This document shows positions 1 to 11,416 of a stretch of 11,416 nucleotides of DNA, piece after piece. Location: positions 1 through 11,416 of IMG/VR virus record IMGVR_UViG_3300022188_000577; one strand, given 5' to 3'. Position 1 is the first letter of the stretch; each line of letters starts with the position of its first letter. The notes below the pieces were generated by a model. It searched no databases. It worked only from the letters and a program-made list of their open reading frames with translations, and had not been told where the DNA came from. Position numbers and translations under genes: made by a program.

Positions 1-66
1 AGCTTGAAGGTTTAACCGTTATCTGAATGTATGTAGAATCCACATCCAAATCCGTTAGAATTCCTT
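1..66 (+). repeat. Terminal direct repeat, copy 1 (circular assembly overlap)
   Basis: agcttgaagg...ttagaattcctt is identical to 11351-11416. Confidence 0.98.
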
Positions 67-1132
67 TATACTCTAATTCCGAACCATACCAAACCTCAAT
101 TACAAATGGATTAAAGTATTCCCAATCGTCTTCATAGAACTTATGCCATGTCCCATCATCATACGGATTTGTGAGCTTTGCGTATAATATCTCGACTTCT
201 TCTGTTAGTCCGTTTTCATCCGTTTGGGCTTCTGCTATTAAGTTGTTGTTTCTATCATATACTTTAACAACTCTGCCATATAATGGATTACCGTTTATAT
301 CTGTAACCTTGAATACTACTGTATAAACTCTTTGGATTTCTCCGCTTATATCTCCTTCAGCCAAATACCACCCGATTTTCCAGTTATGCGGTTTACAGTT
401 TACATATTTAGCCACATTCGGAGAGCGCAACCTGTAAACATTCGCTAACCTATCTTTTGACGAACCTCTTAAATTTCTAAAAACTTGCCCAGCAGAGTTT
501 ACGACCCATGTCATTTGCGCAACAGTCGTCTTAATGTAAACATCCTGAACGTCGCAATTAACCACGTCTTCCATATAACCCCATTTGCCCGTTATTATGT
601 TCTTGTGAAACTCAGTATATCTTAAGTCTCTCACTACATTGTGGAATAAACAACCTTTAACTTCCTTTGCATATCCTCTAAAGTCAAATCTATGTGAATC
701 ATCTCTTAGTATAAAGCTACACGCATAAAACTTAACATCGCTATCTTTCTCAACATTGAAGTATGCGATATATGAGCTTTGATATAGCACAAATGTACAT
801 CCTTTTTGATAATTTTCTTCTCCATCTGTAATTACTTTCTCACCAAAAGTAGCGTTACAGTTTGCTTTAAAGTTTATAATGCGTTCACCATTATAGCTTG
901 CTTGAGTTTCAACTACTAAAACCGTTCCCTTCTCTTCGAATAGCGTTTCAGTGCTACCATCGCCGAATTGAAGCTTAGCAGTAGTTTTGTAAACACATTC
1001 GCTAAGTTTCGTGAATTTTCCCCATCCATTATTTACGTCGGCTTGATAAATATCCTCAAAAGTGTAAGGGCTTCCGTTTTTTGACCCTACTACTGTAATT
1101 GTATTGGTTGTAGAATCGTAAGTTATCGGCAT
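1..1132 (-). CDS. 400-aa putative adhesin/terminal fibre protein, N-terminal 377 codons; continues across the junction at 11350->11280
   Basis: Hand translation: ATG at 1132 (2 nt after the upstream stop), no stop down to base 1. Begins MPITYDSTTNTITVVGSKNGSPYTFEDIYQADVNNGWG. Beta-rich middle, then a prealbumin/carboxypeptidase-regulatory-like motif VFKVTDINGNPLYGRVVKVYDRNNNLIAEAQTDENG. Function is inferred. Confidence 0.88.
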   Translation of the reverse strand, partial: MPITYDSTTNTITVVGSKNGSPYTFEDIYQADVNNGWGKFTKLSECVYKTTAKLQFGDGSTETLFEEKGTVLVVETQASYNGERIINFKANCNATFGEKVITDGEENYQKGCTFVLYQSSYIAYFNVEKDSDVKFYACSFILRDDSHRFDFRGYAKEVKGCLFHNVVRDLRYTEFHKNIITGKWGYMEDVVNCDVQDVYIKTTVAQMTWVVNSAGQVFRNLRGSSKDRLANVYRLRSPNVAKYVNCKPHNWKIGWYLAEGDISGEIQRVYTVVFKVTDINGNPLYGRVVKVYDRNNNLIAEAQTDENGLTEEVEILYAKLTNPYDDGTWHKFYEDDWEYFNPFVIEVWYGSELEYKGILTDLDVDSTYIQITVKPSS

Positions 1133-1134
1133 AT

Positions 1135-1410
1135 TTACAATGGATATTCTTCTGGAATTTCTTCACATTGGCTTAGGTCTATCTCTACGTTAATGTCTGA
1201 AACGTCAATCGTATCTTTCTCGTATTCTTTTAGACGTTCAGGAATTTCTAATCCTTGTAGCTTTAACGTTGCTACGTATAGTATCTTAAACTTTTCTGGA
1301 ACTTTGTCCCAATCCATCCTATACCACTTGTCATTGCAAGGAAACACTATCTCTAAGTTTTCTCCGCTTTGGTTCACGTTTATCAAATTGAATGGTATTT
1401 TTACTATCAT
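1135..1410 (-). CDS. Hypothetical protein, 91 aa (fibre operon)
   Basis: ATG start, 1-2 nt gaps to both neighbours, typical composition. Confidence 0.8.
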   Translation of the reverse strand: MIVKIPFNLINVNQSGENLEIVFPCNDKWYRMDWDKVPEKFKILYVATLKLQGLEIPERLKEYEKDTIDVSDINVEIDLSQCEEIPEEYPL

Positions 1411-1411
1411 A

Positions 1412-1762
1412 TTACTTATAAAACTCTGATATCTTAATTAAATTGCCGTTTTCATCATATATCAAATCTCTCTTTAATTGAATAGTTTGATTAGCTTCTT
1501 CATCAAATACATAAAAAACGATTTGCTTTAAAGTAGAATCTTCATAAATAAACTCTACGTCTAATATTTTCACTATAACTTCTTTATATTCGTTTGTAGA
1601 AGTATCTTTATAATATATTACATTTCTATTCTTATATAATGTAAATATTGGGTCTCTTAATATCACTTCATGCTTGTCTACGTAAGCTACTAACTTATTC
1701 CAATCCTTCGCATATAATACCTCTCCCTCTCTTTTTCTTAACTCGTTGTATACCTCTCCCAT
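1412..1762 (-). CDS. Putative virion fibre/adaptor protein, 116 aa
   Basis: N-terminal GEVLYAKDWNKLV resembles the G-x-x-(I/L)-x-A-x-x-WN motif of viral fibre N-termini; C-terminal LIYDENGNL beta-hairpin. Function is inferred. Confidence 0.7.
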   Translation of the reverse strand: MGEVYNELRKREGEVLYAKDWNKLVAYVDKHEVILRDPIFTLYKNRNVIYYKDTSTNEYKEVIVKILDVEFIYEDSTLKQIVFYVFDEEANQTIQLKRDLIYDENGNLIKISEFYK

Positions 1763-1771
1763 TGTTATATA

Positions 1772-2425
1772 TTATATTATTATGATATAGTTATTATCTC
1801 CATACCAATCTATGATTACTTTTTTCGTCATTACGTAACTATTATAGGGTTTTTCAGAATATACGTCAACGATTACGTTTAATATTCTACATAATTCATC
1901 GTAAAACGTATTTTTTGTTATGTTATTATGTATTTCAATACATAAATTTGGCTTGTCTCTCTTTAAAACTTCGTATGCACCTAATAAAACGTTATACTCG
2001 TGTCCTTCCGTATCTATTTTAATAAAATCTACTTTTATGTTATTGAATAAGTTATCAATCGTTTCAGTCTCTACGTCGTAAGTATCTTTTGTTTTAACTT
2101 CTTTATGCTTGTCATCAACTATTGAAGAATGAACTAACGTCTCTTTATCGTAAAACCTCGTTTTTCCTTTTATACTTGATAAAGCTATGTTATAACAAAA
2201 GACTTTCTTATTTAACAATCCCAATTCTTCCATATTTTTAATTAAAATGTTGTATAACTTTTTGTTAGGTTCAAATGCATAAACTTTTTCTGAAATTTGT
2301 GATAAAAAATAAGACCATTGCCCATCTGATGCTCCAATGTCTATTGCCACATTATACTTCTTATCCTTGAAATATTCCTTTATTTTCTTTTCGTGGACAT
2401 TCCATTTAAGTATCTCAATCACCAT
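1772..2425 (-). CDS. FkbM-family SAM-dependent methyltransferase
   Basis: Motifs IDIGASDG, VYAFEPN, NIALS, TIDNL, FIKIDTEGHEYNVLLGA, IEIH. Confidence 0.93.
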   Translation of the reverse strand: MVIEILKWNVHEKKIKEYFKDKKYNVAIDIGASDGQWSYFLSQISEKVYAFEPNKKLYNILIKNMEELGLLNKKVFCYNIALSSIKGKTRFYDKETLVHSSIVDDKHKEVKTKDTYDVETETIDNLFNNIKVDFIKIDTEGHEYNVLLGAYEVLKRDKPNLCIEIHNNITKNTFYDELCRILNVIVDVYSEKPYNSYVMTKKVIIDWYGDNNYIIII

Positions 2426-3123
2426 TTTACCTTATCTAATATATCCTTTTCCGATAACTTTCCTTTAAACTCTATTAGTATAAAGTTATCATACTGTAAA
2501 CAATTATCAATTACTTCAATATATTCCGCATATACTTTTTTTAACATGTCTTTAAATGTTTCCTTTGTTAATTCATTATATGGAAAGTAATCAAATATCT
2601 TTCTAAAAAATACTGAAATCATAAAGGCATTAGTTATCTGCTTCCCCATTGCATACTTGTCAGTTTTATCCCACCAACCCATGTAAGAATTATATACTTC
2701 TTCAACAGGTCTTTTCAACGCTATAACTTTACAATGCTTAAATCTTTCACATATTTCCTTTAAATGTATCCATATGTAAACATCTTTTATTAACCAATTT
2801 CCATCCAATCTATCTATTTCTCTTAATATTCTTAGATAACTCCCTCCTACTTCAATATCTGGATACAAGTTCCAAACCCATTCGTGCATCCATGTTTTTG
2901 CATTTTCATAAATTCGTTCAAGTAATTCTTTTGGTAGCTTATAATAATCGTGGTTAATTTCACCTATTACGTCGTGAGTTAAGCAATTTCCTCTTAACGC
3001 AAACTCTGGATAATCTTTATTGAAAGGTTCATACAATCCATATAAGTTATAATGTTCTTTTAATACTTTATATGTGAATGCTGTTCCCGTTCTCGGAAAA
3101 GAAATTATCATGAACTTAATCAT
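2419..3123 (-). CDS. PAPS-dependent sulfotransferase
   Basis: N-terminal 5'-PSB loop ISFPRTGTAF, then YEPF, and 3'-PB-like motif VIALKRPVEEVYNSY. Overlaps the methyltransferase start by 7 nt. Confidence 0.85.
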   Translation of the reverse strand: MIKFMIISFPRTGTAFTYKVLKEHYNLYGLYEPFNKDYPEFALRGNCLTHDVIGEINHDYYKLPKELLERIYENAKTWMHEWVWNLYPDIEVGGSYLRILREIDRLDGNWLIKDVYIWIHLKEICERFKHCKVIALKRPVEEVYNSYMGWWDKTDKYAMGKQITNAFMISVFFRKIFDYFPYNELTKETFKDMLKKVYAEYIEVIDNCLQYDNFILIEFKGKLSEKDILDKVKW

Positions 3124-3144
3124 GTTAAAAAAATAATTACACTA

Positions 3145-3152
3145 TTTTTAAA
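3145..3152 (-). promoter_or_regulatory. Candidate archaeal TATA box for the sulfotransferase operon
   Basis: TTTAAAAA on the minus strand, 22-29 nt upstream of the ATG at 3123, preceded by purine-rich GGAGAA. Confidence 0.45.
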
Positions 3153-3238
3153 TTCTCCGTCTTTTTAATAATCTTCTTAATAAACTTTTCTTTTCATACA
3201 ATTTCATTATCACATATATTATAAAAAATAATATTAGG

Positions 3239-3532
3239 TTAGCAAGCAAATCTACTACGTTCATTTCTTTGTTCTTCTTCAACTTTTTCTATAAAACTCT
3301 TCACGACGTTCTGGTAAGTATCGAGTATCACTGTAATCGTGTTCAAAGTTGCAAACGCCGATGCATACAGTAATGTTATAGCGTCCATTTCTTGCCCTTT
3401 TTCCTTTAGCTTTTCATTATAAGCTTCTGCTATTTCTTCAAGTAAGCTTACATACTCATCTACTATCTTTTTTAATCTCTTTTTTGATATCTCCTCTGCT
3501 TCTTTGAACCTTCTGTACACTATCATCCTCAT
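3239..3532 (-). CDS. Hypothetical helical/coiled-coil protein, 97 aa
   Basis: ATGA overlap with the upstream gene; charged helical composition. Confidence 0.8.
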   Translation of the reverse strand: MRMIVYRRFKEAEEISKKRLKKIVDEYVSLLEEIAEAYNEKLKEKGQEMDAITLLYASAFATLNTITVILDTYQNVVKSFIEKVEEEQRNERSRFAC

Positions 3533-3801
3533 TTCAATATGAATTCAATTTCTATTCCATCCTTGAACTTAACCCAGATTGTATCGTTCTTTCTTACTTC
3601 ATATGATATACCATCATCCTTTGATTTTGCGTATAATTTGTTATTATGAACGAATAAATCATCTAATTCATCAAGGTTATACTGATCGTCTATCAAAGTT
3701 ATCGATTCTATGTCTTCTTTATTTTTCTTTATATACTCTATAAATTTCCTTATCTTTTCAACTTTTTTTCTATTGAAAAAGTTTGTTATCACGTTTCCCA
3801 T
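3529..3801 (-). CDS. Hypothetical protein, 90 aa
   Basis: ATG preceded by an SD-like GTGA; overlaps both neighbours. Confidence 0.8.
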   Translation of the reverse strand: MGNVITNFFNRKKVEKIRKFIEYIKKNKEDIESITLIDDQYNLDELDDLFVHNNKLYAKSKDDGISYEVRKNDTIWVKFKDGIEIEFILK

Positions 3802-4004
3802 ATTATCACTACAGTTCTATTTCCTTTTTTCTTCGTTTTTATTTCTTCTTTTATTTCTAATTCTTTTACTGCTGAATATACAGCTCCTATCGTTGAATTC
3901 GCTTCTTTCACTATTTCCTTTACCAACTCTGATAATTCTATTTCCTTTATTCCTTTTGCTTTTAACTCATTTATTTTTTTCAAGATGTGTTCTTTCAATG
4001 TCAC
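3789..4004 (-). CDS. Winged helix-turn-helix DNA-binding protein 1 (71 aa from a GTG start)
   Basis: Aligns without gaps to 8883..9089 if it starts at GTG 4004. A TATA/BRE sits 27-34 nt upstream of that GTG, so the track start at 4052 is probably too long. Confidence 0.72.
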   Translation of the reverse strand: MTLKEHILKKINELKAKGIKEIELSELVKEIVKEANSTIGAVYSAVKELEIKEEIKTKKKGNRTVVIIWET

Positions 4005-4030
4005 GTTAATGTTATTTATTATCATCATCA

Positions 4031-4044
4031 TATTTAAATTTTTC
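4031..4044 (-). promoter_or_regulatory. BRE + TATA box for the wHTH1 operon
   Basis: Minus strand reads GAAAAA-TTTAAATA. Confidence 0.6.
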
Positions 4045-4066
4045 TTCATCAACTCGAAAATTAAAC

Positions 4067-4114
4067 AAATTGTTAAACGAATTTTTTGATAAATTGTTTG
4101 ATAAATTATTGAAT
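4067..4114. repeat. Four imperfect tandem 12-bp repeats
   Basis: aaattgttaaac / gaattttttgat / aaattgtttgat / aaattattgaat. Confidence 0.6.
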
Positions 4115-4175
4115 AAATGGTCCATTAGAGTATTTACTTTACAAAAATACTATATTTTATTTAACGACAATTACT

Positions 4176-4183
4176 TTTAATAA
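4176..4183 (+). promoter_or_regulatory. Candidate TATA box for 4209..4421
   Basis: TTTAATAA 26-33 nt upstream of the ATG. Confidence 0.45.
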
Positions 4184-4208
4184 GTTACTTGATACGTTAC
4201 TTATTAAA

Positions 4209-4421
4209 ATGTCTTACAACAAAGTTTCAAAGCTTTTTAAAAGCGTTTCGTGTTTGTTTAAACTGATTGAACTTTTTGAGAGAATTGATAATTTCCAAAA
4301 GGATCTAATTATTATAAAAGAGAGGATTAAATACATTAACGACGAAGTTACAGAAATTAAAAAAGACGTTAAAGAGTTAAGAAAGTTTATTTTCGAAATC
4401 TTAATTAAAAACAAGAAGTAA
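4209..4421 (+). CDS. Small coiled-coil protein, 70 aa
   Basis: Heptad pattern RIDNFQKDLIIIKERIKYINDEVTEIKKDVKELRKFI; upstream TATA box. Confidence 0.7.
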   Translation: MSYNKVSKLFKSVSCLFKLIELFERIDNFQKDLIIIKERIKYINDEVTEIKKDVKELRKFIFEILIKNKK

Positions 4422-4425
4422 TCCA

Positions 4426-4593
4426 TTATTTTATTATCTTAACGATTCTTTCAAACGTTGGTTTGTTCTTTAACATTACTCTAAAGACTTTATTACAATA
4501 AGGACATCTTTTCGTCCAATTGTATTTGTTATTCGATTTTGGTTGATATTTCATTGTTTTATTACAATGTGGGCATTGAACTATTAATATCAT
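4426..4593 (-). CDS. C4 zinc-ribbon protein, 55 aa (absent from the ORF track)
   Basis: Hand translation MILIVQCPHCNKTMKYQPKSNNKYNWTKRCPYCNKVFRVMLKNKPTFERIVKIIK*, with two CPxC motifs. Starts 9 nt after the upstream stop. Confidence 0.85.
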   Translation of the reverse strand: MILIVQCPHCNKTMKYQPKSNNKYNWTKRCPYCNKVFRVMLKNKPTFERIVKIIK

Positions 4594-4602
4594 ATTAACG
4601 AT

Positions 4603-5043
4603 TTATAATAAATAATATTTATTAAGTTGCGACGTTCCTAAGACGAAAGCTTTCTTAAATTCATAAGGTCTTTCATACCTATTGTATATTATTATCTTAT
4701 CTATTTCGTTTAAAATATCAGGGTTTAAGTTATACTTTGAAAACTCTTGCTTGATAATTGATACGTATCTTTCCCTATCAACTTTCCATTTATACTTTAA
4801 TTGCGTTTTGAATAGTTTTTGAGCGTATAACAAGTAAGTTTGTAATTCTATTGGTGTTAAGTTATACTTTTGTAAAACTCTTTTAACAGTTTGTAATATC
4901 CTTTGTTCAAACAAAAAATTAACTGTCCAGTTGTTTTTATATTTCTCAAAGTCTATTTTATCAATCGTGTAATTGTTAACGTAATTGTTAGTTCCTTCAA
5001 TGTCCCAGTTGCACTTTACTTTATAAAATTGCATTTTACTCAT
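4603..5043 (-). CDS. SIRV2-type capsid-fold paralog (putative minor structural protein), 146 aa
   Basis: VKRVLQKYNLTPIELQTYLLYAQKL...FSKYNLNPDILNEI matches the MCP C-terminal bundle (VGAILDSHGVPPNQRPFYINVAREV...WISRGLDPAIIDEI) and is clearly paralogous to 10878..11273. Confidence 0.78.
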   Translation of the reverse strand: MSKMQFYKVKCNWDIEGTNNYVNNYTIDKIDFEKYKNNWTVNFLFEQRILQTVKRVLQKYNLTPIELQTYLLYAQKLFKTQLKYKWKVDRERYVSIIKQEFSKYNLNPDILNEIDKIIIYNRYERPYEFKKAFVLGTSQLNKYYLL

Positions 5044-5057
5044 TGTTTAATTATGTT

Positions 5058-5146
5058 ACCCTTGATTTATAAACATTGAACCCTATGTGACCACTTGCCC
5101 TGTAATCCGACATGACCCTTGACTTAAATACTTTGAACCCTGCGTG
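5058..5146. repeat. Two 32-bp direct repeats, 57-bp period (5058-5089 and 5115-5146)
   Basis: acccttgatttataaacattgaaccctatgtg vs acccttgacttaaatactttgaaccctgcgtg, 26/32 identical. Confidence 0.85.
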
Positions 5147-5534
5147 TTACACTTACTTTATTCATAATCATTATTATCTTTAACTTCTTCGCCATCTCGA
5201 ATAGGTCTTTATACTTATTGACGTCTATATCGTGTTTTTTAATGAAATCAAGTATGTTTTGATAAATTAACTCAAAAGTTTTGTTTGTAAACTTTCTATG
5301 CTTGTAAACTATTTTTTTACAAAACGAAAACGTTAGCATTGCGTCCCACGACGTCCATTCACACCTTTCTATCTTTCTATTTGCATAATCTATAAAGTGT
5401 TTTTCAACTTCTAACTGATAAGCTAATTCATAATATACTTTATCATATGTTAACTCCTTTACTTTTGAAAATATGAGTTCCTGTTGTTGCTTGTTAAACT
5501 TGTTATAAGCTCTTTTTAAAGAATATTTAAGCAT
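5124..5534 (-). CDS. Divergent capsid-fold paralog, 136 aa (possibly 160 aa via a +1 shift, ending at 5051)
   Basis: TAATG coupling to the upstream gene. FSFCKKIVYKHRKFTNKTF...IKKHDID resembles MCP INVAREVYRLSRKFAGQTL...ISRGLD. Confidence 0.65.
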   Translation of the reverse strand: MLKYSLKRAYNKFNKQQQELIFSKVKELTYDKVYYELAYQLEVEKHFIDYANRKIERCEWTSWDAMLTFSFCKKIVYKHRKFTNKTFELIYQNILDFIKKHDIDVNKYKDLFEMAKKLKIIMIMNKVSVTRRVQSI

Positions 5535-6415
5535 TAAAAACCTCTACTTTGTCTATATTCTCTTAATACATCAAATTGAGTCGAATATGTAACTATTACA
5601 TGTTTTGCTATATCCTTATACCTTCTAACAAAATAATCTAATATCCTAAACAATTTCATTTTAACCCTATTTAAATAGTATCTTTTTCTTTCGTTTATTC
5701 TTTGCATTTTTCTTGTTAAATACTTTCTCATCCAATCTTCATAATTATCAACATACCTTTTTCTATACTCCAAGTATCTAACTTTATATCTCAATTTATA
5801 ATATGCTCTGTATACTTTGTTTTCCTTTGCTTTGTTAACTAAATCATTTAATGTGCTTATCAACTCAGAAGCTTTTGTTTTGTCATGTTCTTTATTAATT
5901 AATTTTTCATAATATTCAAGAGTATCCTCATATGCGTCTATTATTTTTAAATGTATATCATATGTTTTGTGTTGTTTTAACATATTCTTAAACGACTCAA
6001 CATCGTTTTTATAGTCATTTATTATCGATTCAATTTCGTTTAAAACCTCTTTTGCTTTATCATAATTTTTTGATTTAATTAAGTTTTTAACAAGCTCAAA
6101 CTTATTTCTTATTAAGTAATTTCTATCTCTTAATCTTCTTTCAACTGAATCAAGATCAACACCTCTTGCTTTTTGATACATATGTATGTAGAAAGGTAAA
6201 TTATCTATACAAAACCATACAGCCATTACAATTATTGAAATTAGTGCTGGGTTTATATCTATTCTATTTTCATCAATTATATATTGAAAATCTTTGTATC
6301 TTGATTTTAATCTGCTTAAAATTTCGTCATATTTTCTTATTATCTTATATCTTATTGAATCATATTTTCCTAAATAATACATTAATCTCTGTTCTGCTTC
6401 TTTTCCGGATATCAT
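5534..6415 (-). CDS. Basic alpha-helical protein, 293 aa, probably structural or DNA-binding
   Basis: Long ORF directly downstream of the MCP; rich in K/R/Y; helical. N-terminus (RLMYYLGKYD) weakly recalls the MCP N-terminal arm. Confidence 0.75.
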   Translation of the reverse strand: MISGKEAEQRLMYYLGKYDSIRYKIIRKYDEILSRLKSRYKDFQYIIDENRIDINPALISIIVMAVWFCIDNLPFYIHMYQKARGVDLDSVERRLRDRNYLIRNKFELVKNLIKSKNYDKAKEVLNEIESIINDYKNDVESFKNMLKQHKTYDIHLKIIDAYEDTLEYYEKLINKEHDKTKASELISTLNDLVNKAKENKVYRAYYKLRYKVRYLEYRKRYVDNYEDWMRKYLTRKMQRINERKRYYLNRVKMKLFRILDYFVRRYKDIAKHVIVTYSTQFDVLREYRQSRGF

Positions 6416-6421
6416 TATAAT

Positions 6422-6431
6422 AAAAAATAAA
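6422..6431 (-). terminator. Candidate archaeal oligo(T) terminator after the MCP gene
   Basis: TTTATTTTTT 15 nt after the stop; the same motif follows 8883..9089. Confidence 0.4.
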
Positions 6432-6446
6432 GTTAGTTAGATGCTA

Positions 6447-6809
6447 TTAATAGACGCAAGTTATTCCAAATAACGCCAAAATCTCGTCAATTATGGCTGG
6501 GTCTAAACCTCTTGAAATCCACTTGCTTCTTACTATGCAAGCCTCGTTAGTTAACGTTTGCCCTGCAAATTTCCTTGATAACCTGTAAACTTCTCTTGCA
6601 ACATTGATATAGAAAGGTCTTTGGTTTGGAGGAACTCCGTGCGAGTCTAAAATAGCACCTACTTGAGTTTCTATTGTTGCTAAGTTGCTAAATTGTGTAT
6701 CAACTTGCTCTACCATTATATCCTTTAACGCTGTAAATCTACTTTGAATTACTGTTGGGTCGACTTTTGCTTCATACTTTTTCTTCCTATATACGTCAGA
6801 CCTTACCAT
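6447..6809 (-). CDS. Major capsid protein, SIRV2/AFV1-type (Adnaviria helical MCP), 120 aa
   Basis: Basic N-terminal arm RSDVYRKKKYEAKVDPTV, then V-x-A-I-L-x-x-x-G-V...R-x-x-Y and a terminal GLDPAIIDEI. As I recall it, this parallels the rudivirus coat pattern (RYAKWQAKF...NPTV...VSAVLTQYGI...NRAIY...NPQVLDAV). Has its own strong TATA box and a downstream T-tract. Confidence 0.85.
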   Translation of the reverse strand: MVRSDVYRKKKYEAKVDPTVIQSRFTALKDIMVEQVDTQFSNLATIETQVGAILDSHGVPPNQRPFYINVAREVYRLSRKFAGQTLTNEACIVRSKWISRGLDPAIIDEILALFGITCVY

Positions 6810-6835
6810 CTCAATATATAATGTATTTTTACTAC

Positions 6836-6850
6836 TATATAAAGTTTATC
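6836..6850 (-). promoter_or_regulatory. BRE + TATA box of the MCP promoter
   Basis: Minus strand GATAAAC-TTTATATA; TATA is 27-34 nt upstream of ATG 6809. Confidence 0.7.
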
Positions 6851-6890
6851 TTGTTGTTTCACTTTTGAGTTATCAAGAACCCATTGTGTT

Positions 6891-6903
6891 CAAAATTTAT
6901 AAA
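6891..6903 (+). promoter_or_regulatory. BRE + TATA box of the divergent zinc-finger operon
   Basis: CAAAA-TTTATAAA; TATA is 23-30 nt upstream of ATG 6926. Confidence 0.65.
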
Positions 6904-6925
6904 TGAAAGGTCATGTTGGTATATT

Positions 6926-7084
6926 ATGTCAAAGGTAACCTTGTGTCCCAGATGTAATAATAATATGAAGAGTATTTATATTAAGAGAGGAGGAAAGTAC
7001 GTTATCATAGGAAAAATTTGTTTAAATTGCAAGTTATACTTCTTTTATGATATTGATACCAAAGGAAAACGTGATAAGACTTGA
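6926..7084 (+). CDS. C4 zinc-ribbon protein, 52 aa
   Basis: MSKVTLCPRC...ICLNC. ATG 6926 fits the TATA spacing; the track start at 6884 lies upstream of the promoter. Confidence 0.78.
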   Translation: MSKVTLCPRCNNNMKSIYIKRGGKYVIIGKICLNCKLYFFYDIDTKGKRDKT

Positions 7085-7412
7085 GGAAAACAAGTGTATT
7101 AGAAAGTTAGAGGACTTGTTAGACGCTGAAATAAAGACTTTAGAAAAGTTCATTAACAAAGCTTCTGAAGTTAAAAGAAGATTGTATAAGTTAGATTTAG
7201 ACGAAGACGTTAAAAAAAATGTGTTATCTGCTTACGATGAGATAGTAAGTAAGTATGTTTACGAGAATGTAATTAAAAACATCGTTTATTACACTTTATT
7301 AATATGTTACGCCAAAGTTCTAAAAGAAAAACGAAAGTTATTTTGTTATGAGGATTCAAAAGGTGCAATATACGTTCATTACCTCCCTCACATAAAAGAG
7401 TTGCAAAAATAA
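7047..7412 (+). CDS. Hypothetical helical protein, 121 aa
   Basis: ATG start, overlaps the zinc-finger gene, typical composition. Confidence 0.78.
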   Translation: MILIPKENVIRLEENKCIRKLEDLLDAEIKTLEKFINKASEVKRRLYKLDLDEDVKKNVLSAYDEIVSKYVYENVIKNIVYYTLLICYAKVLKEKRKLFCYEDSKGAIYVHYLPHIKELQK

Positions 7413-7435
7413 ACTATTCCTATCATTGTTAAGAT

Positions 7436-8596
7436 TTAAGTAGATAAATGTAACAAGAATTTTGGATAATTGTTTTCCGCGAGAAACTTATCGTAATACT
7501 TTTTAGTTGCTTTTCTCTTTTTTTCTGTTAAATCTTGATTCTTATAAGCTTTTAACATAGTTTTTGCTAATTCAGAAGCTTCGTATTCGTAGTATTCGCA
7601 CATAAATCCATGTTCGTTTGGTTTTTGTATTATCGATTCATAATCAAAGAAATACGCAACGTCTTCTCTTATTAACTCTTTAAACAATTGATGTTTAACG
7701 CATATTACACAGTTATTAAAATATAAAGATTCTGCAATTGGCATGCAAAAACCTTCTGACTTTGAAGAAACAACATAAACTTTACTTACATTGTATAAAC
7801 TCAATATTTCCTTATAGGATAAGCTTCCTCCTAAATCAAGTTGTATTATCCTTTTCTTTTCTATTAACTTTTTTATGAATTTGTGTTGCTTTAAGTTGTA
7901 ATCTGTTATTAAAACGTGCACGGTATCTTCTATCTTGTTTTTTAAACAATGTTTATAAAACATAGTTAAAGCTTTTACGTATTTATCCCATCCTTTTCTT
8001 GTATTTTTGTTTGCATTTGTCATATAAACGAACTTATCAGTTAAATCAACGTTATAGTTTTCTTTAAAGAATTCATACGCCCAATCTTTTAGTTTTTTGG
8101 CATCATTTATATAACTTTTTGGTATGGAGTGATAAATTACGTCTGTTATTTTTACGTCGTGTTTTCTTATTATGTTGTAAGTGTAATAAGAATTTGCTAT
8201 TATTTTAGCATACTTTGAAATATTTTGTAGATTTAACTTCAAAAGTAAGTTTTTGTATAAAGTGTCTCCTTCGACTGTGTAATATATGATATTTCTTTTT
8301 TTAGTTGACATTGAAATAACGTGAGTTAAGTTCGAAACGTAAAAAGAACCAAGAGGAACTATGAATATTCTTTTATCAAATAGTTGCATCTTTCTTATAA
8401 AGTTAGAAGATAAAGAATTTTCAAATATGTCAATGTATGCGTGAATTTGATTTTGTTTTAATATCTCAGAAATCGTTTCTGCTACGTTTTTAAAAGATAT
8501 AGCGTCTACGTAAAAAATAGCAACCGTTGACGATTTCAAATCGTCCAAATAATCTGATATCGATTGTGAAAGAGTGGTGTCGTCTCGCCACTTCAT
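7436..8596 (-). CDS. GT-B fold glycosyltransferase, family GT4
   Basis: IANSYYT, VIYHSI, RKGWD and the signature VVSSKSEGFCMPIAES (E-x7-E). GT4 enzymes are common in rudiviruses and lipothrixviruses. Confidence 0.92.
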   Translation of the reverse strand: MKWRDDTTLSQSISDYLDDLKSSTVAIFYVDAISFKNVAETISEILKQNQIHAYIDIFENSLSSNFIRKMQLFDKRIFIVPLGSFYVSNLTHVISMSTKKRNIIYYTVEGDTLYKNLLLKLNLQNISKYAKIIANSYYTYNIIRKHDVKITDVIYHSIPKSYINDAKKLKDWAYEFFKENYNVDLTDKFVYMTNANKNTRKGWDKYVKALTMFYKHCLKNKIEDTVHVLITDYNLKQHKFIKKLIEKKRIIQLDLGGSLSYKEILSLYNVSKVYVVSSKSEGFCMPIAESLYFNNCVICVKHQLFKELIREDVAYFFDYESIIQKPNEHGFMCEYYEYEASELAKTMLKAYKNQDLTEKKRKATKKYYDKFLAENNYPKFLLHLST

Positions 8597-8604
8597 TTTT
8601 CATC

Positions 8605-8640
8605 AAACTTTTAAAAAAATTATCGAACAAATTTTTCAAT
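8605..8640. repeat. Three imperfect tandem 12-bp repeats resembling 4067-4114
   Basis: aaacttttaaaa / aaattatcgaac / aaatttttcaat. Confidence 0.45.
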
Positions 8641-8657
8641 CTTTTTTAATCATCTAA

Positions 8658-8806
8658 CAGTTGTGATTTTATTATTAGTTTTATTATACAATACTTCAGG
8701 ATATATATTAGCAAAAAATCAATAGTATTGTATTATAGTAGTAATAATTAATTAAAGTAATTATCAAATAGTTAATTAATTAAATTAAAAAATAAAATCA
8801 CTACTG
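8658..8806. repeat. Nested inverted repeats in the longest intergenic region (candidate origin)
   Basis: Outer pair 8658-8673/8791-8806 (15/16). Inner pairs 8682-8695/8724-8737 (13/14) and 8745-8755/8772-8782 (11/11). Confidence 0.75.
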
Positions 8807-8843
8807 AGTTAAAAAAAATCTGTCGATTTTCGGATAACACACC

Positions 8844-8858
8844 GCAAAGGTTTAATAT
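8844..8858 (+). promoter_or_regulatory. BRE + TATA box for the wHTH2 operon
   Basis: GCAAAGG-TTTAATAT; TATA is 25-32 nt upstream of ATG 8883. Confidence 0.7.
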
Positions 8859-8882
8859 GCTAAAGCTAATAATAAAATAACC

Positions 8883-9089
8883 ATGAACGTGAAGCAACTT
8901 GTATTACTACTGCTACAAGATTATAAGGACATGGGGGTTACCAAAATAGAGGAAAGGGTATTGGTAGAGGAAGTTATAAAGAGAACAGGATGTCACAGGC
9001 AGACTGTGTATAACGTAATACATTGGTTAAAAGTTAGAGGTGTAATAAGGGTTGAAGGCTCGGGTAGGAACAAGTTTATCTTACTTTAA
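8883..9089 (+). CDS. Winged helix-turn-helix DNA-binding protein 2, 68 aa
   Basis: LVEEVIKRTGCHRQTVYNVIHWLKVRGVIRVEG is a typical HTH recognition helix followed by L-x-x-x-G-x-I and a wing. Confidence 0.85.
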   Translation: MNVKQLVLLLLQDYKDMGVTKIEERVLVEEVIKRTGCHRQTVYNVIHWLKVRGVIRVEGSGRNKFILL

Positions 9090-9100
9090 TTTATTTTTTT
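9090..9100 (+). terminator. Candidate oligo(T) terminator after wHTH2
   Basis: TTTATTTTTTT immediately after the stop. Confidence 0.35.
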
Positions 9101-9110
9101 AAAATCGTAT

Positions 9111-9863
9111 ATGAAGTATCGTTATAGGGATATAACATATAGACTTAAAAGGTACAAACTGTACTGGAAACAAAGACTTTATTATATTTTAGTTGATTTG
9201 ATAAAAGAACGCGCGTCTGAAAGGTTATTAGATGAATTAACTAAGCAAATGTTTTTTGAGTGGATTGTTATTCCTAAACTAAAATCTTTAGGATTTACAG
9301 ACGAAGAGTTAAGGAGAATGTTTCCTTCATATCTCGGATATGCAAAGAAGTTGTGGAACAAAAAATACAAGTATGTTTTTTCTTCTTTAGACGTTGAACA
9401 CGATAACGTTTATTACGAAATGATTCAAAGAGGATTCGATAAAGAAAAGAGTAAAACAGCGTTAAATATTGGTAGAAAACATCCTGTCGTTGCAAAAGCT
9501 TATATTAAAGTTTCGTCAACTCCTTTAATTTATCCACCCCTTCTAAAAGCACTTCCCGTTTCTACTAAATTTAGTTACGAAATAGTTCCACCAATATTAG
9601 TATCAAAAGAGTTAAAAACTAAATTTAGTTACAAATTAACTCCACCTTTAACTGTTGAAAAAGAAATTAACGTATCTTTTAATTACTCTCTAGTCCCACC
9701 TTTGGAAGTTGAAAAAGAAATTAACGTGTCTTTTAACTATTCGCTTGTTCCACCAATCAAAATATCGAAAGAAGTTAACGTATCTTTTAATTACGAACTA
9801 GTTCCACCCTTAAAAGTTATAAAAGAAATTGAAATTATATTTAACTATGAAATTACAAGCTAA
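9111..9863 (+). CDS. Capsid-fold N-terminal domain fused to six 18-aa repeats (putative terminal/fibre anchor), 250 aa
   Basis: VIPKLKSLGF...PSYLGYAKKLWNKKYKY...MIQRGFD matches the paralog pattern; C-terminal repeats of the type VPPLEVEKEINVSFNYSL. Confidence 0.78.
   Translation: MKYRYRDITYRLKRYKLYWKQRLYYILVDLIKERASERLLDELTKQMFFEWIVIPKLKSLGFTDEELRRMFPSYLGYAKKLWNKKYKYVFSSLDVEHDNVYYEMIQRGFDKEKSKTALNIGRKHPVVAKAYIKVSSTPLIYPPLLKALPVSTKFSYEIVPPILVSKELKTKFSYKLTPPLTVEKEINVSFNYSLVPPLEVEKEINVSFNYSLVPPIKISKEVNVSFNYELVPPLKVIKEIEIIFNYEITS
9531..9854 (+). repeat. Six tandem 54-bp coding repeats
   Basis: YPPLLKALPVSTKFSYEI / VPPILVSKELKTKFSYKL / TPPLTVEKEINVSFNYSL / VPPLEVEKEINVSFNYSL / VPPIKISKEVNVSFNYEL / VPPLKVIKEIEIIFNYEI. 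Confidence 0.95.
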
Positions 9864-10866
9864 GGTAATACTGAAAATAATAAAAAAAGACGGTAGGGAA
9901 GTAGTTATCGAAAAAGAGTGCAATAGTTTTCACGAAAACTTTTTCAGAATGTTAAAGTCTGTGTATACGAATGACTTAGTTATAACGAATAGGGATGGTT
10001 CAACAACAACTTTAAATCACTTCGAAAAAGTAAGCATTATAAACACAGACGGAACGAAATACACGAAATGGAGGATTGCAATAGGACAAGGAATTTCAGA
10101 TAACGATTTAACGACAATTATCGACGAAAAAGACGCTACAGTTGAATTAGACGAAGCTAACAGAGTTGCAACTGATTACGCAAAGTTTGGTCCTTACTCA
10201 GAATCAAAAACGATTGACGCCGTAGCACTTTATGTAAAAACTAACTTTAGTTCTGGTGCGGGAAAGTTTGCTTGGTCTTTTAACGCACCTTTGCTTTTGG
10301 AAAATGTCGGGACAACGACGATAGAGGCTGGAGACGTTTTAGTAGTTGGAATACAAACTAAGTTAGTCGCAGGGACAAACGTAACGATTCACGATTCTTT
10401 TGTCTATGTTTCTTTATCGTTTTTAGCGTATTACATGATTGAATACGAATATTCACCTGTGGGCGATGACCAACTTCAAATAGCTTCAAAATATAAAGAT
10501 TTAGCTTTGAGTGGTAACGCAGACTACTGGGCTTATTACGATAGTTATTACGACGAAAAACTCGATTTCTTGAATCATTCAGCAGAAATGAAAATTTATC
10601 ATTCTGATGGGACTTCTGTAACTGAATCTGCAACTGCAACGATTGATTTAACTAATAGAAAAGTTATAATCTACGCTTCTCACTTTTATTCAGAATCAAA
10701 GACAGTGACGAAAGTAGAACTTTACATTCGTTTAAAAGGATGGTATTATAGCGATGGATGGGTGCAAGGCGCGTTGTATCACAAACTTTTAACTGCAGAT
10801 AACTTGAACGTAACAGTGGACGTTAACTACACGTTTAAACCAAAGTTTGAAATATCTATACCTTAA
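9847..10866 (+). CDS. Beta-rich putative virion terminal-structure protein with an internal duplication, 339 aa
   Basis: Likely start is ATG 9847. Two related halves, each containing NR...YA...YSESKT(I/V)..V.LY. IAIGQG recalls tail-fibre/baseplate N-terminal domains. Confidence 0.75.
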   Translation: MKLQAKVILKIIKKDGREVVIEKECNSFHENFFRMLKSVYTNDLVITNRDGSTTTLNHFEKVSIINTDGTKYTKWRIAIGQGISDNDLTTIIDEKDATVELDEANRVATDYAKFGPYSESKTIDAVALYVKTNFSSGAGKFAWSFNAPLLLENVGTTTIEAGDVLVVGIQTKLVAGTNVTIHDSFVYVSLSFLAYYMIEYEYSPVGDDQLQIASKYKDLALSGNADYWAYYDSYYDEKLDFLNHSAEMKIYHSDGTSVTESATATIDLTNRKVIIYASHFYSESKTVTKVELYIRLKGWYYSDGWVQGALYHKLLTADNLNVTVDVNYTFKPKFEISIP

Positions 10867-10877
10867 CGAAAATATTT

Positions 10878-11273
10878 ATGACGTGTAAACATTGGAACTT
10901 TCAAGGATACTTTAAGTATAAGCAAAGTTGGACTGACGAAAGGTTAAAAGAGAAAATTGAACCAATTGTAGATAGAATTATAAATAAGTGGAAATCTTGG
11001 CAAATAAGGTTGGACTTTTGCTTAAACAACGTTAAAAGAGTTTTAGATAGATTTGACATAACATCCGTTCAAAGAAAATATTATTTACTTTATGCTATTT
11101 TATTATGGTCTGTAATGTTTTTGTATGAATGGTTGGTCGATAGGAAAAGAGAACATTCTATTTTGAGATATAAGTTCGAAAGTTACGGCTTAGATCCGAA
11201 CATTCTAAACGAAATAGATAGAGTTGTTATATGGAACAAAGTTATTCAGCCTGTTAACAGGTTTTGGGAATAA
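10878..11273 (+). CDS. SIRV2-type capsid-fold paralog (putative minor structural protein), 131 aa
   Basis: VKRVLDRFDITSVQRKYYLLYA...KFESYGLDPNILNEID matches both the MCP and 4603..5043. Confidence 0.8.
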   Translation: MTCKHWNFQGYFKYKQSWTDERLKEKIEPIVDRIINKWKSWQIRLDFCLNNVKRVLDRFDITSVQRKYYLLYAILLWSVMFLYEWLVDRKREHSILRYKFESYGLDPNILNEIDRVVIWNKVIQPVNRFWE

Positions 11274-11279
11274 TTATCC

Positions 11280-11350
11280 TTATATAAACTTAAATGCCGT
11301 CATCTTTGCGTCGTGTTTCTTAATCTCGTTGTATATATCGCTTAAAGTAA
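11280..11350 (-). CDS. C-terminal end of the 400-aa junction-spanning protein
   Basis: In frame with 1..1132: ...VKPSS|FTLSDIYNEIKKHDAKMTAFKFI*. TAA at 11280-11282 is 6 nt from the convergent stop at 11273. Confidence 0.85.
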
Positions 11351-11416
11351 AGCTTGAAGGTTTAACCGTTATCTGAATGTATGTAGAATCCACATCCAAA
11401 TCCGTTAGAATTCCTT
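11351..11416 (+). repeat. Terminal direct repeat, copy 2 (circular assembly overlap)
   Basis: Identical to 1-66. Confidence 0.98.

What the first reader, a model, noticed from the sequence alone, without database searches (positions are those of the whole stretch)
1..11350. No recognisable replication, integration, packaging or egress gene in an apparently complete genome
Seen: almost all sequence is accounted for by ORFs. I find no Walker A/B NTPase, HUH Rep, polymerase/primase, tyrosine recombinase or Holliday-junction resolvase motifs, and no clear transmembrane protein. Inference: replication depends on host machinery recruited by small proteins (two wHTH, two Zn ribbons, coiled coils), or the element is a satellite, or one of the unknown ORFs (293 aa, 121 aa, 97 aa, 90 aa) is a new type of initiator.
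Basis: partly seen in the sequence, partly recalled or inferred. Interest (0 to 1): 0.7.

Follow-up and report, generated by a model that had tools for sequence, protein, structure and literature searches.

The report
Small circular archaeal filamentous-virus genome
This is the complete 11.35-kb circular-mapping genome of an uncultivated archaeal virus from Guaymas Basin that builds its particle from rod-virus (SIRV2-type) coat proteins; that explains the missing packaging motor, its replication genes remain unidentified, and its small circular genome falls outside the published definition of such viruses.

Summary
The window is an 11,350-bp unit plus an exact 66-nt end overlap. Two independent assemblies cross or wrap the junction, and a 400-aa ORF is intact only when the ends are joined. 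Coding density is 92%. Pfam, PHROGs, NCBIfam, PDB sequence searches and motif scans find no polymerase, primase, helicase, Rep, integrase, resolvase, terminase or lysis protein.

ORF 6447-6809 is a SIRV2-type (realm Adnaviria) major capsid protein: it passes two Pfam gathering scores, and its AlphaFold model (pLDDT 88.5) has SIRV2, SSRV1 and AFV1 coat proteins as best PDB matches. Three further ORFs (131, 146 and 250 aa) carry the same domain. A coat that assembles around DNA needs no packaging ATPase, so that absence is ordinary.

The unusual part is the genome. Classified adnaviruses are linear, 17.6-41.5 kb, with inverted terminal repeats. This one and seven relatives (5.1-10.9 kb) map as circles, while a 20-kb relative has 123-nt ITRs. 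MCP paralogues are the only genes shared by all eight circular genomes.

Replication most likely relies on the host replisome. Two wHTH proteins next to AT-rich repeat regions are candidate origin or operator binders; this is inference only.

The parts
1..66 (.). Exact copy of 11351-11416: the end overlap of a circular-mapping assembly, lying inside the 400-aa ORF.
1..1132 (-). N-terminal 377 aa of a 400-aa beta-rich protein, a putative fibre or adsorption protein. The ORF continues across the junction into 11280-11350. It has an Ig-like or CarboxypepD_reg-like segment near residues 271-310 (sub-threshold) and a 54% identical homologue in L003.
11280..11350 (-). C-terminal end and stop codon of the junction-spanning 400-aa ORF.
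1135..1410 (-). 91-aa acidic ORF with no homologue, in one operon with the fibre-like gene.
1412..1762 (-). 116-aa ORF with no homologue.
1772..2425 (-). FkbM-family SAM methyltransferase, 217 aa.
   Evidence: PF05050, 1.1e-23; TIGR01444, 4.8e-31
2419..3123 (-). Probable sulfotransferase, 234 aa, with an N-terminal PAPS-loop-like motif. Pfam scores are borderline.
   Evidence: Sulfotransfer_3 24.3 bits against GA 27; Sulfotransfer_4 22.7 against 22.8; one search found no PDB match
3239..3532 (-). 97-aa helical ORF of unknown function.
3529..3801 (-). 90-aa ORF of unknown function.
3789..4052 (-). Small winged-helix-like DNA-binding protein (87 aa; 86 aa from the ATG start), paralogous to the 68-aa protein at 8883-9089.
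   Evidence: MCM4_WHD 6e-3, sub-threshold; 7e-4 to the 68-aa ORF
4059..4122 (.). About five tandem 12-nt units in a 156-nt intergenic region of 19% GC, directly upstream of the wHTH gene. Candidate operator or origin iterons.
   Evidence: (36/48 matches at period 12; 0 of 300 shuffles reach this)
4209..4421 (+). 70-aa ORF called by JGI. It is not hydrophobic; the weak PHROG 'holin' hit is not credible.
4426..4593 (-). 55-aa zinc ribbon with two CxxC pairs.
4603..5043 (-). MCP2 paralogue b, 146 aa, SIRV2-type coat domain.
   Evidence: 3e-21 to the 131-aa ORF; weak Sulf_coat_C
5059..5140 (.). Two copies of a 25-nt motif (CCCTTGAYTTAWAWACWTTGAACCC), 57 nt apart, containing a TATA-like box upstream of the 146-aa gene.
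   Evidence: 2 matches against 0 expected
5124..5534 (-). 136-aa basic helical ORF, not MCP-like, with no homologue.
5534..6415 (-). 293-aa basic, all-helical ORFan with one TM-like segment (residues about 52-70). Function unknown.
6447..6809 (-). Major capsid protein 1 (120 aa), SIRV2-type alpha-helical fold: the Adnaviria hallmark.
   Evidence: PF12193 29.2 > 25.2; PF25647 28.5 > 27; 6d5f 6e-6, 6wq0 1e-5, 3j9x 7e-3; pLDDT 88.5; top 9 Foldseek hits are adnavirus coat proteins; TM 0.69 to 3j9x
6926..7084 (+). Zinc ribbon. The mechanical ORF starts at TTG 6884; the likely start is ATG 6926 (52 aa), 23 nt after a TTTATAAA box.
7047..7412 (+). 121-aa helical ORF of unknown function.
7436..8596 (-). 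GT1-family glycosyltransferase, 386 aa, shared with 3 other circular relatives and with the linear relative.
   Evidence: 2e-14; 1.6e-19
8597..8882 (.). Longest non-coding region (286 nt, 20% GC) between divergent genes, with several inverted repeats and a 24-nt AT-rich tandem. Candidate origin and promoters, upstream of the second wHTH gene.
   Evidence: I9, I12, I16; (marginal: 5 of 300 shuffles)
8883..9089 (+). 68-aa winged-helix-like protein, conserved in L003 and L018 (77 aa).
   Evidence: TrmB 8.4e-4, sub-threshold
9111..9863 (+). 250-aa MCP-like minor structural protein: N-terminal coat-like domain plus a C-terminal array of 18-aa (54-nt) repeats at about 9570-9856.
   Evidence: hhalign E 4.5e-5; homologues L003 358 aa and 183 aa
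9829..10866 (+). 345-aa (339 aa by the JGI call) beta-rich protein, conserved in L003 and L018. Probably structural.
10878..11273 (+). MCP2 paralogue a, 131 aa, orthologous to the MCP2 of relatives.
   Evidence: 58% to the L003 128-aa protein; 1.6e-5 to MCP1; MCP1 against MCP2 profiles: 97.4%, E 1.5e-11

Best explanation
The window is the whole genome of an uncultivated archaeal virus from Guaymas Basin hydrothermal-vent metagenomes. It is an 11,350-bp molecule that maps as a circle.

Capsid (shown). It encodes SIRV2-type (Adnaviria) capsid proteins: MCP1 (120 aa), two MCP2 paralogues (131 and 146 aa) and a 250-aa protein with an N-terminal MCP-like domain.

Assembly (inferred by analogy with solved adnavirus virions). 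MCP1/MCP2 dimers polymerise directly around the double-stranded DNA. That is why no terminase, portal or packaging ATPase exists. The MCP-fusion protein and the beta-rich 345-, 400-, 116- and 91-aa proteins would form terminal or adsorption structures. The GT1 glycosyltransferase, FkbM methyltransferase and sulfotransferase-like enzyme would modify virion glycans.

Replication (inferred). The genome carries no recognisable replication enzyme, and the clade has no shared non-structural gene. It therefore most likely replicates as an episome with the host replisome. The two paralogous small winged-helix proteins sit next to the two longest AT-rich, repeat-bearing intergenic regions and are the best candidates for origin or operator binding.

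Integration is unlikely and the egress route is unknown.
For: Identity
- MCP1 passes the gathering scores of two adnavirus coat families.
- It matches solved SFV1, SSRV1 and SIRV2 coat chains by sequence and alphalipothrixvirus MCP genes by tblastn.
- Its AlphaFold model (pLDDT 88.5) has SIRV2, SSRV1 and AFV1 coat proteins as its nine best PDB matches.
- MCP1 and MCP2 profiles align at 97.4% probability. The 250-aa N-terminus aligns at E 4.5e-5.

Topology
- (see the observation check).

Clade
- Seven further circular-mapping genomes span 5.1-10.9 kb: L018, L019, L020, L023, L025, L029/L030 and L031.
- Several end overlaps equal the assembler k-mer (141, 127, 30), and two assemblies of one virus (L029, L030) have different breakpoints.
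- A 19,963-bp relative has a perfect 123-nt ITR, so the method does detect linear genomes.
- The only family present in all eight circular genomes is the MCP domain, with 30 proteins at 3-5 per genome.

No replication gene
- for the window; for relatives.

Cis elements
- The 12-nt x5 array at 4059-4122 is reached by 0 of 300 shuffles. The 286-nt AT-rich region carries inverted repeats. The two wHTH proteins are paralogues.

Known practice
- ICTV states that adnaviruses share no core genes other than MCPs and use diverse replication strategies.
Against: - Circularity is inferred from assemblies, not from reads or DNA ends. A terminally redundant or concatemeric molecule would assemble the same way.
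- The SIRV2-type coat is known only on linear DNA, so packaging of a circle has no structural precedent in the realm.
- Absence of replication genes is a negative result at profile-HMM sensitivity. About 13 small ORFs are unannotated and only two proteins were folded.
- The 12-nt array overlaps the expected promoter of the wHTH operon, so simple autoregulation explains it as well as an origin does.
- Two relatives (L029, L031) do encode a RecA-like P-loop ATPase with Walker A and B motifs. Clade members are therefore not uniformly free of DNA-metabolism genes.
- The host is unknown. The only hint is a relative binned in an Aenigmatarchaeota MAG.
Confidence: 0.6

Rival explanations
1. One of the lineage-specific ORFans (293, 136, 121, 97 or 90 aa, or a wHTH or zinc-ribbon protein) is a new kind of replication initiator that nicks or melts an origin and loads host enzymes.
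For: The window-specific genes have no homologues or annotation. The non-structural module differs between clade members, as expected if each lineage carries its own replication solution. Sister genomes L029 and L031 carry DUF932 plus a RecA-like ATPase in that variable part. An iteron-like array lies beside a DNA-binding gene.
Against: No catalytic motif (HUH, Walker A, DxD-type) lies in any real ORF. The 293-aa protein is predicted as an all-helical, coiled-coil-like protein with a TM-like segment and no fold match. The other candidates are at most 136 aa.
Confidence: 0.22
2. The element is a satellite, or one segment of a multipartite virus, and takes its replication functions from a co-infecting relative or a second segment.
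For: At least two other MCP-bearing contigs occur in the same Guaymas sample: L003 (Ga0190313_1002200) and L032 (Ga0190313_1002255). The smallest relative, L023 (5.1 kb), encodes little beyond MCP-domain proteins, a fibre-like protein and a zinc finger.
Against: The window encodes a full set of its own coat, fibre-like and glycosylation genes, unlike satellites that borrow a capsid. L003 is a homologous, parallel genome (MCP1 74%, MCP2 58%, fibre-like protein 54%), not a complementary segment, and it also lacks replication genes. The virus was assembled in several samples as the same single circle.
Confidence: 0.08
3. The true molecule is linear, like all classified adnaviruses. The circular map would be an artefact of terminal redundancy, circular permutation or replicative concatemers.
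For: All described SIRV2-type MCP viruses have linear genomes with ITRs. A 20-kb member of the same MCP clade is linear with 123-nt ITRs. The 66-nt overlap does not equal a usual assembler k-mer.
Against: A linear ITR genome cannot yield a direct end overlap. No internal ITR-like pair exists; the best inverted repeat is 28 nt at 82%. Three assemblies break the circle at different places. Every unit-length relative behaves the same way, several with k-sized overlaps. An ORF spans the junction.
Confidence: 0.1

Closest known systems
Realm Adnaviria: Lipothrixviridae (SFV1, SBFV2, AFV1), Rudiviridae (SIRV2, SSRV1), Tristromaviridae
   Same: MCP with the SIRV2-type helical fold. Two diverged MCP paralogues, as in the heterodimeric families. 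A glycosyltransferase near the MCP gene. MCP-domain minor structural proteins, as reported for Baiyanviruses, Chiyouviridae and Ahmunviridae. No packaging ATPase.
   Different: The genome maps as a circle of 11.35 kb without ITRs, against linear 17.6-41.5 kb genomes with ITRs. There is no rudivirus-type Rep, Holliday-junction resolvase or pyramid (PVAP) protein. MCP identity to alphalipothrixviruses is only about 30%, and the clade is separated from them with 100/100 support.
'Samediviridae' and Ahmunviridae (marine hydrothermal adnaviruses; preprint PMC12934983)
   Same: Deep-sea vent origin, SIRV2-type MCP-1 and MCP-2, a glycosyltransferase module and compact genomes of 12-22 kb.
   Different: Samediviruses are linear with ITRs. 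All encode an AAA+-wHTH ATPase, SSB, an MCM-like protein and AEP PriS, and nearly all encode PCNA. None of these is detectable here.
Clavaviridae (Aeropyrum pernix bacilliform virus 1)
   Same: Own knowledge: a small circular dsDNA genome (about 5 kb) packed into a rod by a helical coat protein, with no recognisable replication, integration or packaging genes.
   Different: The coat protein here is of the SIRV2 type, not the APBV1 type. No sequence relationship was seen in any search.
IMGVR_UViG_3300014911_000574 (19,963 bp, Guaymas Basin), uncharacterised
   Same: MCP1 45% identical, a shared GT1 and MCP-domain fusion proteins. It also has no Pfam-detectable replication gene.
   Different: It is linear with perfect 123-nt ITRs and encodes a 1,498-aa coiled-coil protein.

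Membership tests
Adnaviria (realm) | Major capsid protein with the SIRV2-type alpha-helical fold | tested here: met
   PF12193 29.2 bits (GA 25.2) and PF25647 28.5 (GA 27). PDB phmmer 6d5f 6e-6, 6wq0 1e-5, 3j9x 7e-3. AF2 pLDDT 88.5 with Foldseek top hits 3j9x (TM 0.69), 6wq0, 3fbz, 3f2e, 3fbl and 5w7g.
Adnaviria (realm) | Linear dsDNA genome with inverted terminal repeats | tested here: not met
   Direct 66-nt end overlap, a junction-spanning ORF and two other assemblies crossing the junction. No ITR was found. The same test detects a 123-nt ITR in a 20-kb relative. Read-level confirmation was not possible.
Adnaviria (realm) | Genome size 17.6-41.5 kb (ICTV profile 2025) | tested here: not met
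   The unit is 11,350 bp. Relatives measure 5.1-10.9 kb.
Adnaviria (realm) | A-form DNA wrapped by MCP dimers in a filamentous virion | not testable with these tools
   Needs particles and cryo-EM. Only the presence of MCP1 and MCP2 paralogues is shown.
Heterodimeric-capsomer adnaviruses (Lipothrixviridae, Tristromaviridae, Ungulaviridae) | Two diverged MCP paralogues | tested here: met
   MCP1 (120 aa) and MCP2 (131 aa, plus a 146-aa duplicate). Profile-profile comparison gives 97.4% and E 1.5e-11. Both types occur in relatives. Heterodimer formation itself was not tested.
Rudiviridae | HUH Rep, Holliday-junction resolvase and pyramid-forming egress protein | tested here: not met
   No such Pfam, PHROG or NCBIfam hits. 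No HUH motif lies in a real ORF.
'Samediviridae' (proposed) | Core AAA+-wHTH ATPase, SSB, PCNA, MCM-like protein and AEP PriS; linear genome with ITRs | tested here: not met
   None detected. The genome maps as a circle.
Satellite virus or capsid-parasitic element | Lacks its own capsid genes and depends on a helper's particle | tested here: not met
   Four MCP-domain genes and fibre-like genes are present. Dependence on a helper for replication was not testable.
Temperate or integrating element | Integrase or recombinase, att site or tRNA fragment, copies inside host chromosomes | tested here: not met
   No integrase hit. No tRNA or Rfam match. MCP searches of 185,579 species genomes found only one free-standing wrapping contig of about 9.5 kb.

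The most novel reading that the evidence does not exclude
These elements could be the first lineage of SIRV2-type (Adnaviria) viruses with truly circular and very small genomes of 5-11 kb. They occur in deep-sea (Guaymas) and terrestrial (Yellowstone) geothermal sites, and some may infect DPANN archaea. Three consequences would follow. First, the coat would have to accommodate a closed DNA loop; for instance, the DNA could double back at the rod ends, with the multiple MCP paralogues and MCP-fusion proteins specialised for the turns. Second, the realm's defining 'linear genome' trait would fail. Third, viruses made of little more than coat-protein paralogues would replicate entirely through host factors.
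Probability: 0.45. Interest if true: 0.8.

Novelty: new variant of a known kind. Interest (0 to 1): 0.62.

Why it matters
Adnaviria is defined by linear A-form dsDNA genomes with inverted terminal repeats. Papers state that SIRV2-type coat genes are exclusive to such viruses.

A well-populated set of circular-mapping genomes one third to one half the size of the smallest classified member would have three effects:
- it would widen the realm's definition;
- it would pose a concrete structural question, namely how this coat wraps a closed circle;
- it would provide minimal genomes, down to 5.1 kb, in which coat-protein paralogues are the only shared genes, which is useful for asking what the minimal requirements of an archaeal virus are.

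The family is not rare. A profile of its MCPs finds 1,533 clusters at 50% identity with E <= 1e-3 and 625 with E <= 1e-10. That total probably includes MCPs of other adnaviruses.

For the original question, the result separates two kinds of absence. Missing packaging genes are ordinary for this virion type. How such genomes replicate is a real open problem.

Tried and rejected
- Family libraries. Pfam, PHROGs and NCBIfam scans of the ORFs gave no replication, recombination, packaging or lysis family. Weak hits to AAA-ATPase_like, TraH, TrbJ, holin and MCM winged-helix domains are all far below cut-offs, and I rejected them as evidence.
- Motifs. Six-frame scans for Walker A, HUH and polymerase B motifs hit only outside real ORFs.
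- 293-aa protein. No homologue among 5.8 billion proteins. The single-sequence AlphaFold model is poor (pLDDT 62.5), and Foldseek returns only generic helical bundles with E >= 0.04. No functional conclusion.
- 136-aa protein. It looked like a fifth MCP paralogue in a MAFFT alignment, but hhalign rejects this (probability 0.1%).
- PDB sequence searches with the 136-, 121-, 234- and 377-aa proteins and with the MCP2 profile found nothing. The polyubiquitin 'hits' to MCP1 are summed repeats of a 25-residue chance match.
- tblastn of the fibre-like and 345-aa proteins against phage records, and of MCP1 against plasmids, gave no match.
- RNA genes. No tRNA or Rfam families.
- Conserved non-coding DNA. 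A search in relatives found nothing beyond chance.
- Hydrophobic ORF 3710-4009 (+). It is antisense to two K/E-rich genes and is treated as spurious.
- GC skew follows gene orientation and gives no independent origin signal.
- Host assignment. A scan of species genomes with the MCP1 alignment found nothing. The MCP2 alignment found one contig binned in an Aenigmatarchaeota MAG, which is only a weak hint.
- Not used: the third large protein search, because the remaining candidates are short ORFans, and the third fold search, because no further model was available.

Full report
**1. What the window is**

The window is IMG/VR contig IMGVR_UViG_3300022188_000577, also known as JGI Ga0190313_1001739. 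A paper that used the same scaffolds describes Ga0190313 and Ga0190314 as Guaymas Basin hydrothermal vent metagenomes. GC content is about 30%.

Bases 1-66 are repeated exactly at 11351-11416, so the unit is 11,350 bp. Joining the ends creates a 400-aa minus-strand ORF that starts at 1132, runs through base 1 and stops at 11280. Two other assemblies show the same join:
- L015 (ENA ERZ27248110, MEGAHIT, 2,144 bp) aligns without a break across 11350|1 at 99% identity.
- L016 (Ga0190314_1000610, 11,830 bp) covers more than one unit starting from a different breakpoint.

There is no inverted terminal repeat. The genome therefore maps as a circle. Without reads I cannot exclude a terminally redundant or concatemeric molecule.

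**2.

Twenty-one ORFs cover 92.3% of the unit. Against Pfam, PHROGs and NCBIfam, the only matches at or above curated thresholds are:
- an FkbM methyltransferase (1772-2425);
- a GT1 glycosyltransferase (7436-8596);
- the archaeal filamentous-virus coat families (6447-6809).

The 234-aa protein is a borderline sulfotransferase. No Walker A or HUH motif falls in a real ORF. There are no tRNA or Rfam matches.

Two corrections apply. The 293-aa protein has one TM-like segment. The two 'wHTH' assignments rest on sub-threshold hits, although the two proteins are paralogues of each other.

**3.

ORF 6447-6809 (120 aa) is an Adnaviria-type major capsid protein. The evidence is as follows:
- It passes the gathering scores of PF12193 (Sulf_coat_C) and PF25647 (SFV1_VP4).
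- It matches the solved coat chains 6d5f, 6wq0 (SSRV1) and 3j9x (SIRV2) by sequence.
- It matches annotated MCP genes of SFV1 and SBFV1/2 at about 30% identity.
- An AlphaFold2 model built on an 18-sequence alignment reaches pLDDT 88.5.
- The nine best Foldseek matches in the PDB are all adnavirus coat proteins: 3j9x with TM 0.69, then 6wq0, 3fbz, 3f2e, 3fbl and 5w7g.

The 131-aa and 146-aa ORFs are a second MCP type. They match each other at 3e-21, and the 131-aa ORF matches MCP1 at 1.6e-5. The MCP1 and MCP2 profiles align at 97.4% probability.

The 250-aa ORF has an MCP-like N-terminus (hhalign E 4.5e-5), and its homologues in relatives hit MCPs directly. It also carries a C-terminal array of 18-residue repeats. 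MCP-domain minor structural proteins have been reported in other adnaviruses.

In this virion type the coat polymerises around the DNA. The lack of a terminase, portal or packaging ATPase is therefore expected, not anomalous. That step rests on established knowledge of the solved SIRV2, SSRV1 and AFV1 virions.

**4. Relatives**

Searches with the MCPs brought in eight circular-mapping genomes, counting the window:

| Genome | Unit (bp) | Evidence for the circular map |
|---|---|---|
| Window | 11,350 | 66-nt overlap, L015 and L016 |
| L029/L030 | 10,938 | overlaps 141 and 121 nt; two assemblies offset by 108 nt |
| L031 | 10,050 | overlap 30 nt |
| L025 | about 9,538 | contig wraps at 86% identity |
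| L018 | 9,514 | overlap 127 nt |
| L019 | 9,198 | overlap 127 nt |
| L020 | 8,937 | contig wraps at 99% identity |
| L023 | 5,098 | overlap 89 nt |

L030 comes from Washburn Spring, Yellowstone. L025 was binned in a Candidatus Aenigmatarchaeota MAG.

By contrast, IMGVR_UViG_3300014911_000574 (19,963 bp, Guaymas) has MCP1 45% identical to the window's and ends in a perfect 123-nt inverted repeat. It is a conventional linear adnavirus genome, which shows that the test can tell the two topologies apart.

In an MCP tree the 13 clade members separate from alphalipothrixviruses with 100/100 support. The position of the linear subclade relative to the circular genomes is unresolved.

A profile of the clade's MCPs finds 1,533 clusters (at 50% identity) with E <= 1e-3 and 625 with E <= 1e-10. 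All of the top 150 have E below 5.2e-20. They are either about 120 aa long or 200-500 aa with the MCP domain at the N-terminus. The full count probably includes MCPs of other adnaviruses.

**5. Gene content of the clade**

Clustering the proteins of the eight circular genomes gives only one universal family, the MCP domain, with 30 proteins at 3-5 per genome. A large coiled-coil protein is present in five genomes and GT1 in four. Everything else is lineage-specific.

Pfam scans of the non-MCP proteins of the relatives find:
- glycosyltransferases, methyltransferases and a cupin;
- a Csx3 ring nuclease;
- RHH and wHTH proteins;
- lectin domains, including an MCP-ConA-lectin fusion in the 5.1-kb genome.

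They find no polymerase, primase, helicase, Rep or integrase.

There is one exception. L029 and L031 encode DUF932 next to a roughly 205-aa RecA-like ATPase with clear Walker A and B motifs (AAA_24 at 6e-5, below cut-off). The non-structural module is thus exchangeable, and the window's version contains no NTPase.

**6. How it most likely replicates**

Shown: there is no recognisable replication enzyme and no conserved non-structural gene in the clade.

Inferred: the genome replicates as an episome using the host replisome.

The best candidate cis elements are the two longest non-coding regions. Each lies directly upstream of one of the two paralogous wHTH genes.
- Region 4053-4208 (19% GC) holds about five tandem 12-nt units at 4059-4122. 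At period 12 there are 36/48 matches, a value reached by none of 300 shuffles.
- Region 8597-8882 (286 nt, 20% GC) holds several inverted repeats and a 24-nt AT-rich tandem. Its significance is marginal, with 5 of 300 shuffles reaching it.

Both regions also contain the promoters of those genes, so plain autoregulation is an equally good reading.

The 293-aa ORFan has no homologue, a low-confidence all-helical model and no fold match. It cannot be assigned. A new initiator among the ORFans remains possible; I put it at about 0.2.

A satellite or segmented lifestyle is less likely, at about 0.08. The element has its own capsid genes, and the co-occurring relative L003 is a parallel genome, not a complement.

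Integration is unlikely. There is no integrase and no tRNA-like sequence. In 185,579 species genomes the only MCP match was a free-standing wrapping contig.

Egress is unknown. No PVAP-like or holin-like protein was found, and the weak PHROG holin hit of the non-hydrophobic 70-aa ORF is not credible.

**7. Comparison with what is known**

The ICTV profile defines adnaviruses as linear dsDNA viruses of 17.6-41.5 kb with terminal inverted repeats. It notes that they share no core genes other than the MCPs and use diverse replication strategies. The Odinarchaeum paper calls SIRV2-family MCP genes exclusive to filamentous viruses with linear genomes.

I checked recent surveys of Thermococcales, Bathyarchaeia, Nitrososphaeria and Asgard viromes. 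They describe new adnavirus families, none with a circular genome:
- Thermococcales 'Samediviridae' are linear with ITRs, 12-22 kb, and encode SSB, PCNA, an MCM-like protein and PriS.
- The Bathyarchaeia, Nitrososphaeria and Asgard surveys report no circular adnavirus genome either.

The window meets the fold criterion of the realm. It fails the topology and size criteria, and it lacks the core genes of Rudiviridae and 'Samediviridae'.

It probably works like a heterodimeric-capsomer adnavirus in assembly. In genome type and dependence on the host it resembles the small circular rod virus APBV1 (own knowledge). I rate it a new variant of a known kind.

**8. Verdict**

Part of it (packaging) is ordinary for this virion type. 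Part of it (replication) is typical of small archaeal viruses and remains unsolved.

The main weakness is that topology is inferred from assemblies only.

Noticed in passing
window 9570-9856: A 54-nt (18-aa) tandem repeat, 4-6 copies at 60-80% identity, forms the C-terminal half of the 250-aa MCP-like protein (motif ...KEINVSFNYSLVPPL.V.). It probably forms a repetitive beta structure displayed from the virion.
   Followed up: partly
window 5059-5083 and 5116-5140: Two copies of a 25-nt motif containing a TATA-like box (0 expected by chance). One lies upstream of the 146-aa MCP2b gene and the other inside the 3' end of the 136-aa gene. A looser inverted copy lies at 6882-6911, in front of the zinc-ribbon gene.
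   Followed up: partly
window 3710-4009 (+): A 99-aa, extremely hydrophobic ORF lies antisense to the 90-aa and 87-aa genes. It is most likely an artefact of reading K/E-rich AT-rich coding sequence backwards, not a membrane protein.
   Followed up: no
L003:2348-2686 (Ga0190313_1002200, same sample): A related virus (MCP1 74% identical) encodes a Csx3 family protein (PF09620, 3.1e-24). This is probably a cyclic-oligoadenylate ring nuclease used against type III CRISPR, which implies a host with such a system.
   Followed up: no
L023 (Ga0180300_10007205; 5,098-bp unit), 457-1431: The smallest circular relative carries two MCPs plus a 324-aa fusion of an MCP domain to a ConA-like lectin (Laminin_G_3, 2e-27), a ready-made receptor-binding coat subunit. 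The whole genome has about 7-10 genes.
   Followed up: partly
L002/L034 (IMGVR_UViG_3300014911_000574): A 19,963-bp relative with perfect 123-nt inverted terminal repeats, so a complete linear genome. It encodes a 1,498-aa coiled-coil protein whose C-terminus resembles the MCP domain, two GT1 enzymes, a methyltransferase and a type I phosphodiesterase.
   Followed up: partly
L029:2456-3875 and L031:7431-8823: Two circular relatives of 10-11 kb encode DUF932 followed by a roughly 205-aa RecA-like ATPase (Walker A GASWIGKS or GKAWVGKS; Walker B IIIDS or IVIDS). This is the only NTPase seen in the clade.
   Followed up: partly
L025 (JAJHRL010000018.1): A circular-mapping relative of about 9.5 kb sits in a Candidatus Aenigmatarchaeota (DPANN) MAG. 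It carries five MCP-domain genes. Its last 1,258 nt repeat the first 1,246 nt at 86% identity, as if two strains were merged while wrapping the circle.
   Followed up: partly
window 6447-6809: phmmer against the PDB ranks polyubiquitin chains first (E about 3e-9). The cause is a 25-residue chance match (GVPPNQ against GIPPDQ) summed over nine ubiquitin repeats. This is an artefact to ignore.
   Followed up: yes
L032 (Ga0190313_1002255, same sample as the window): A third MCP-bearing contig in the same sample (9,547 bp, GC 41%) has a 1,695-aa protein. Its MCP groups with the linear 20-kb relative.
   Followed up: no
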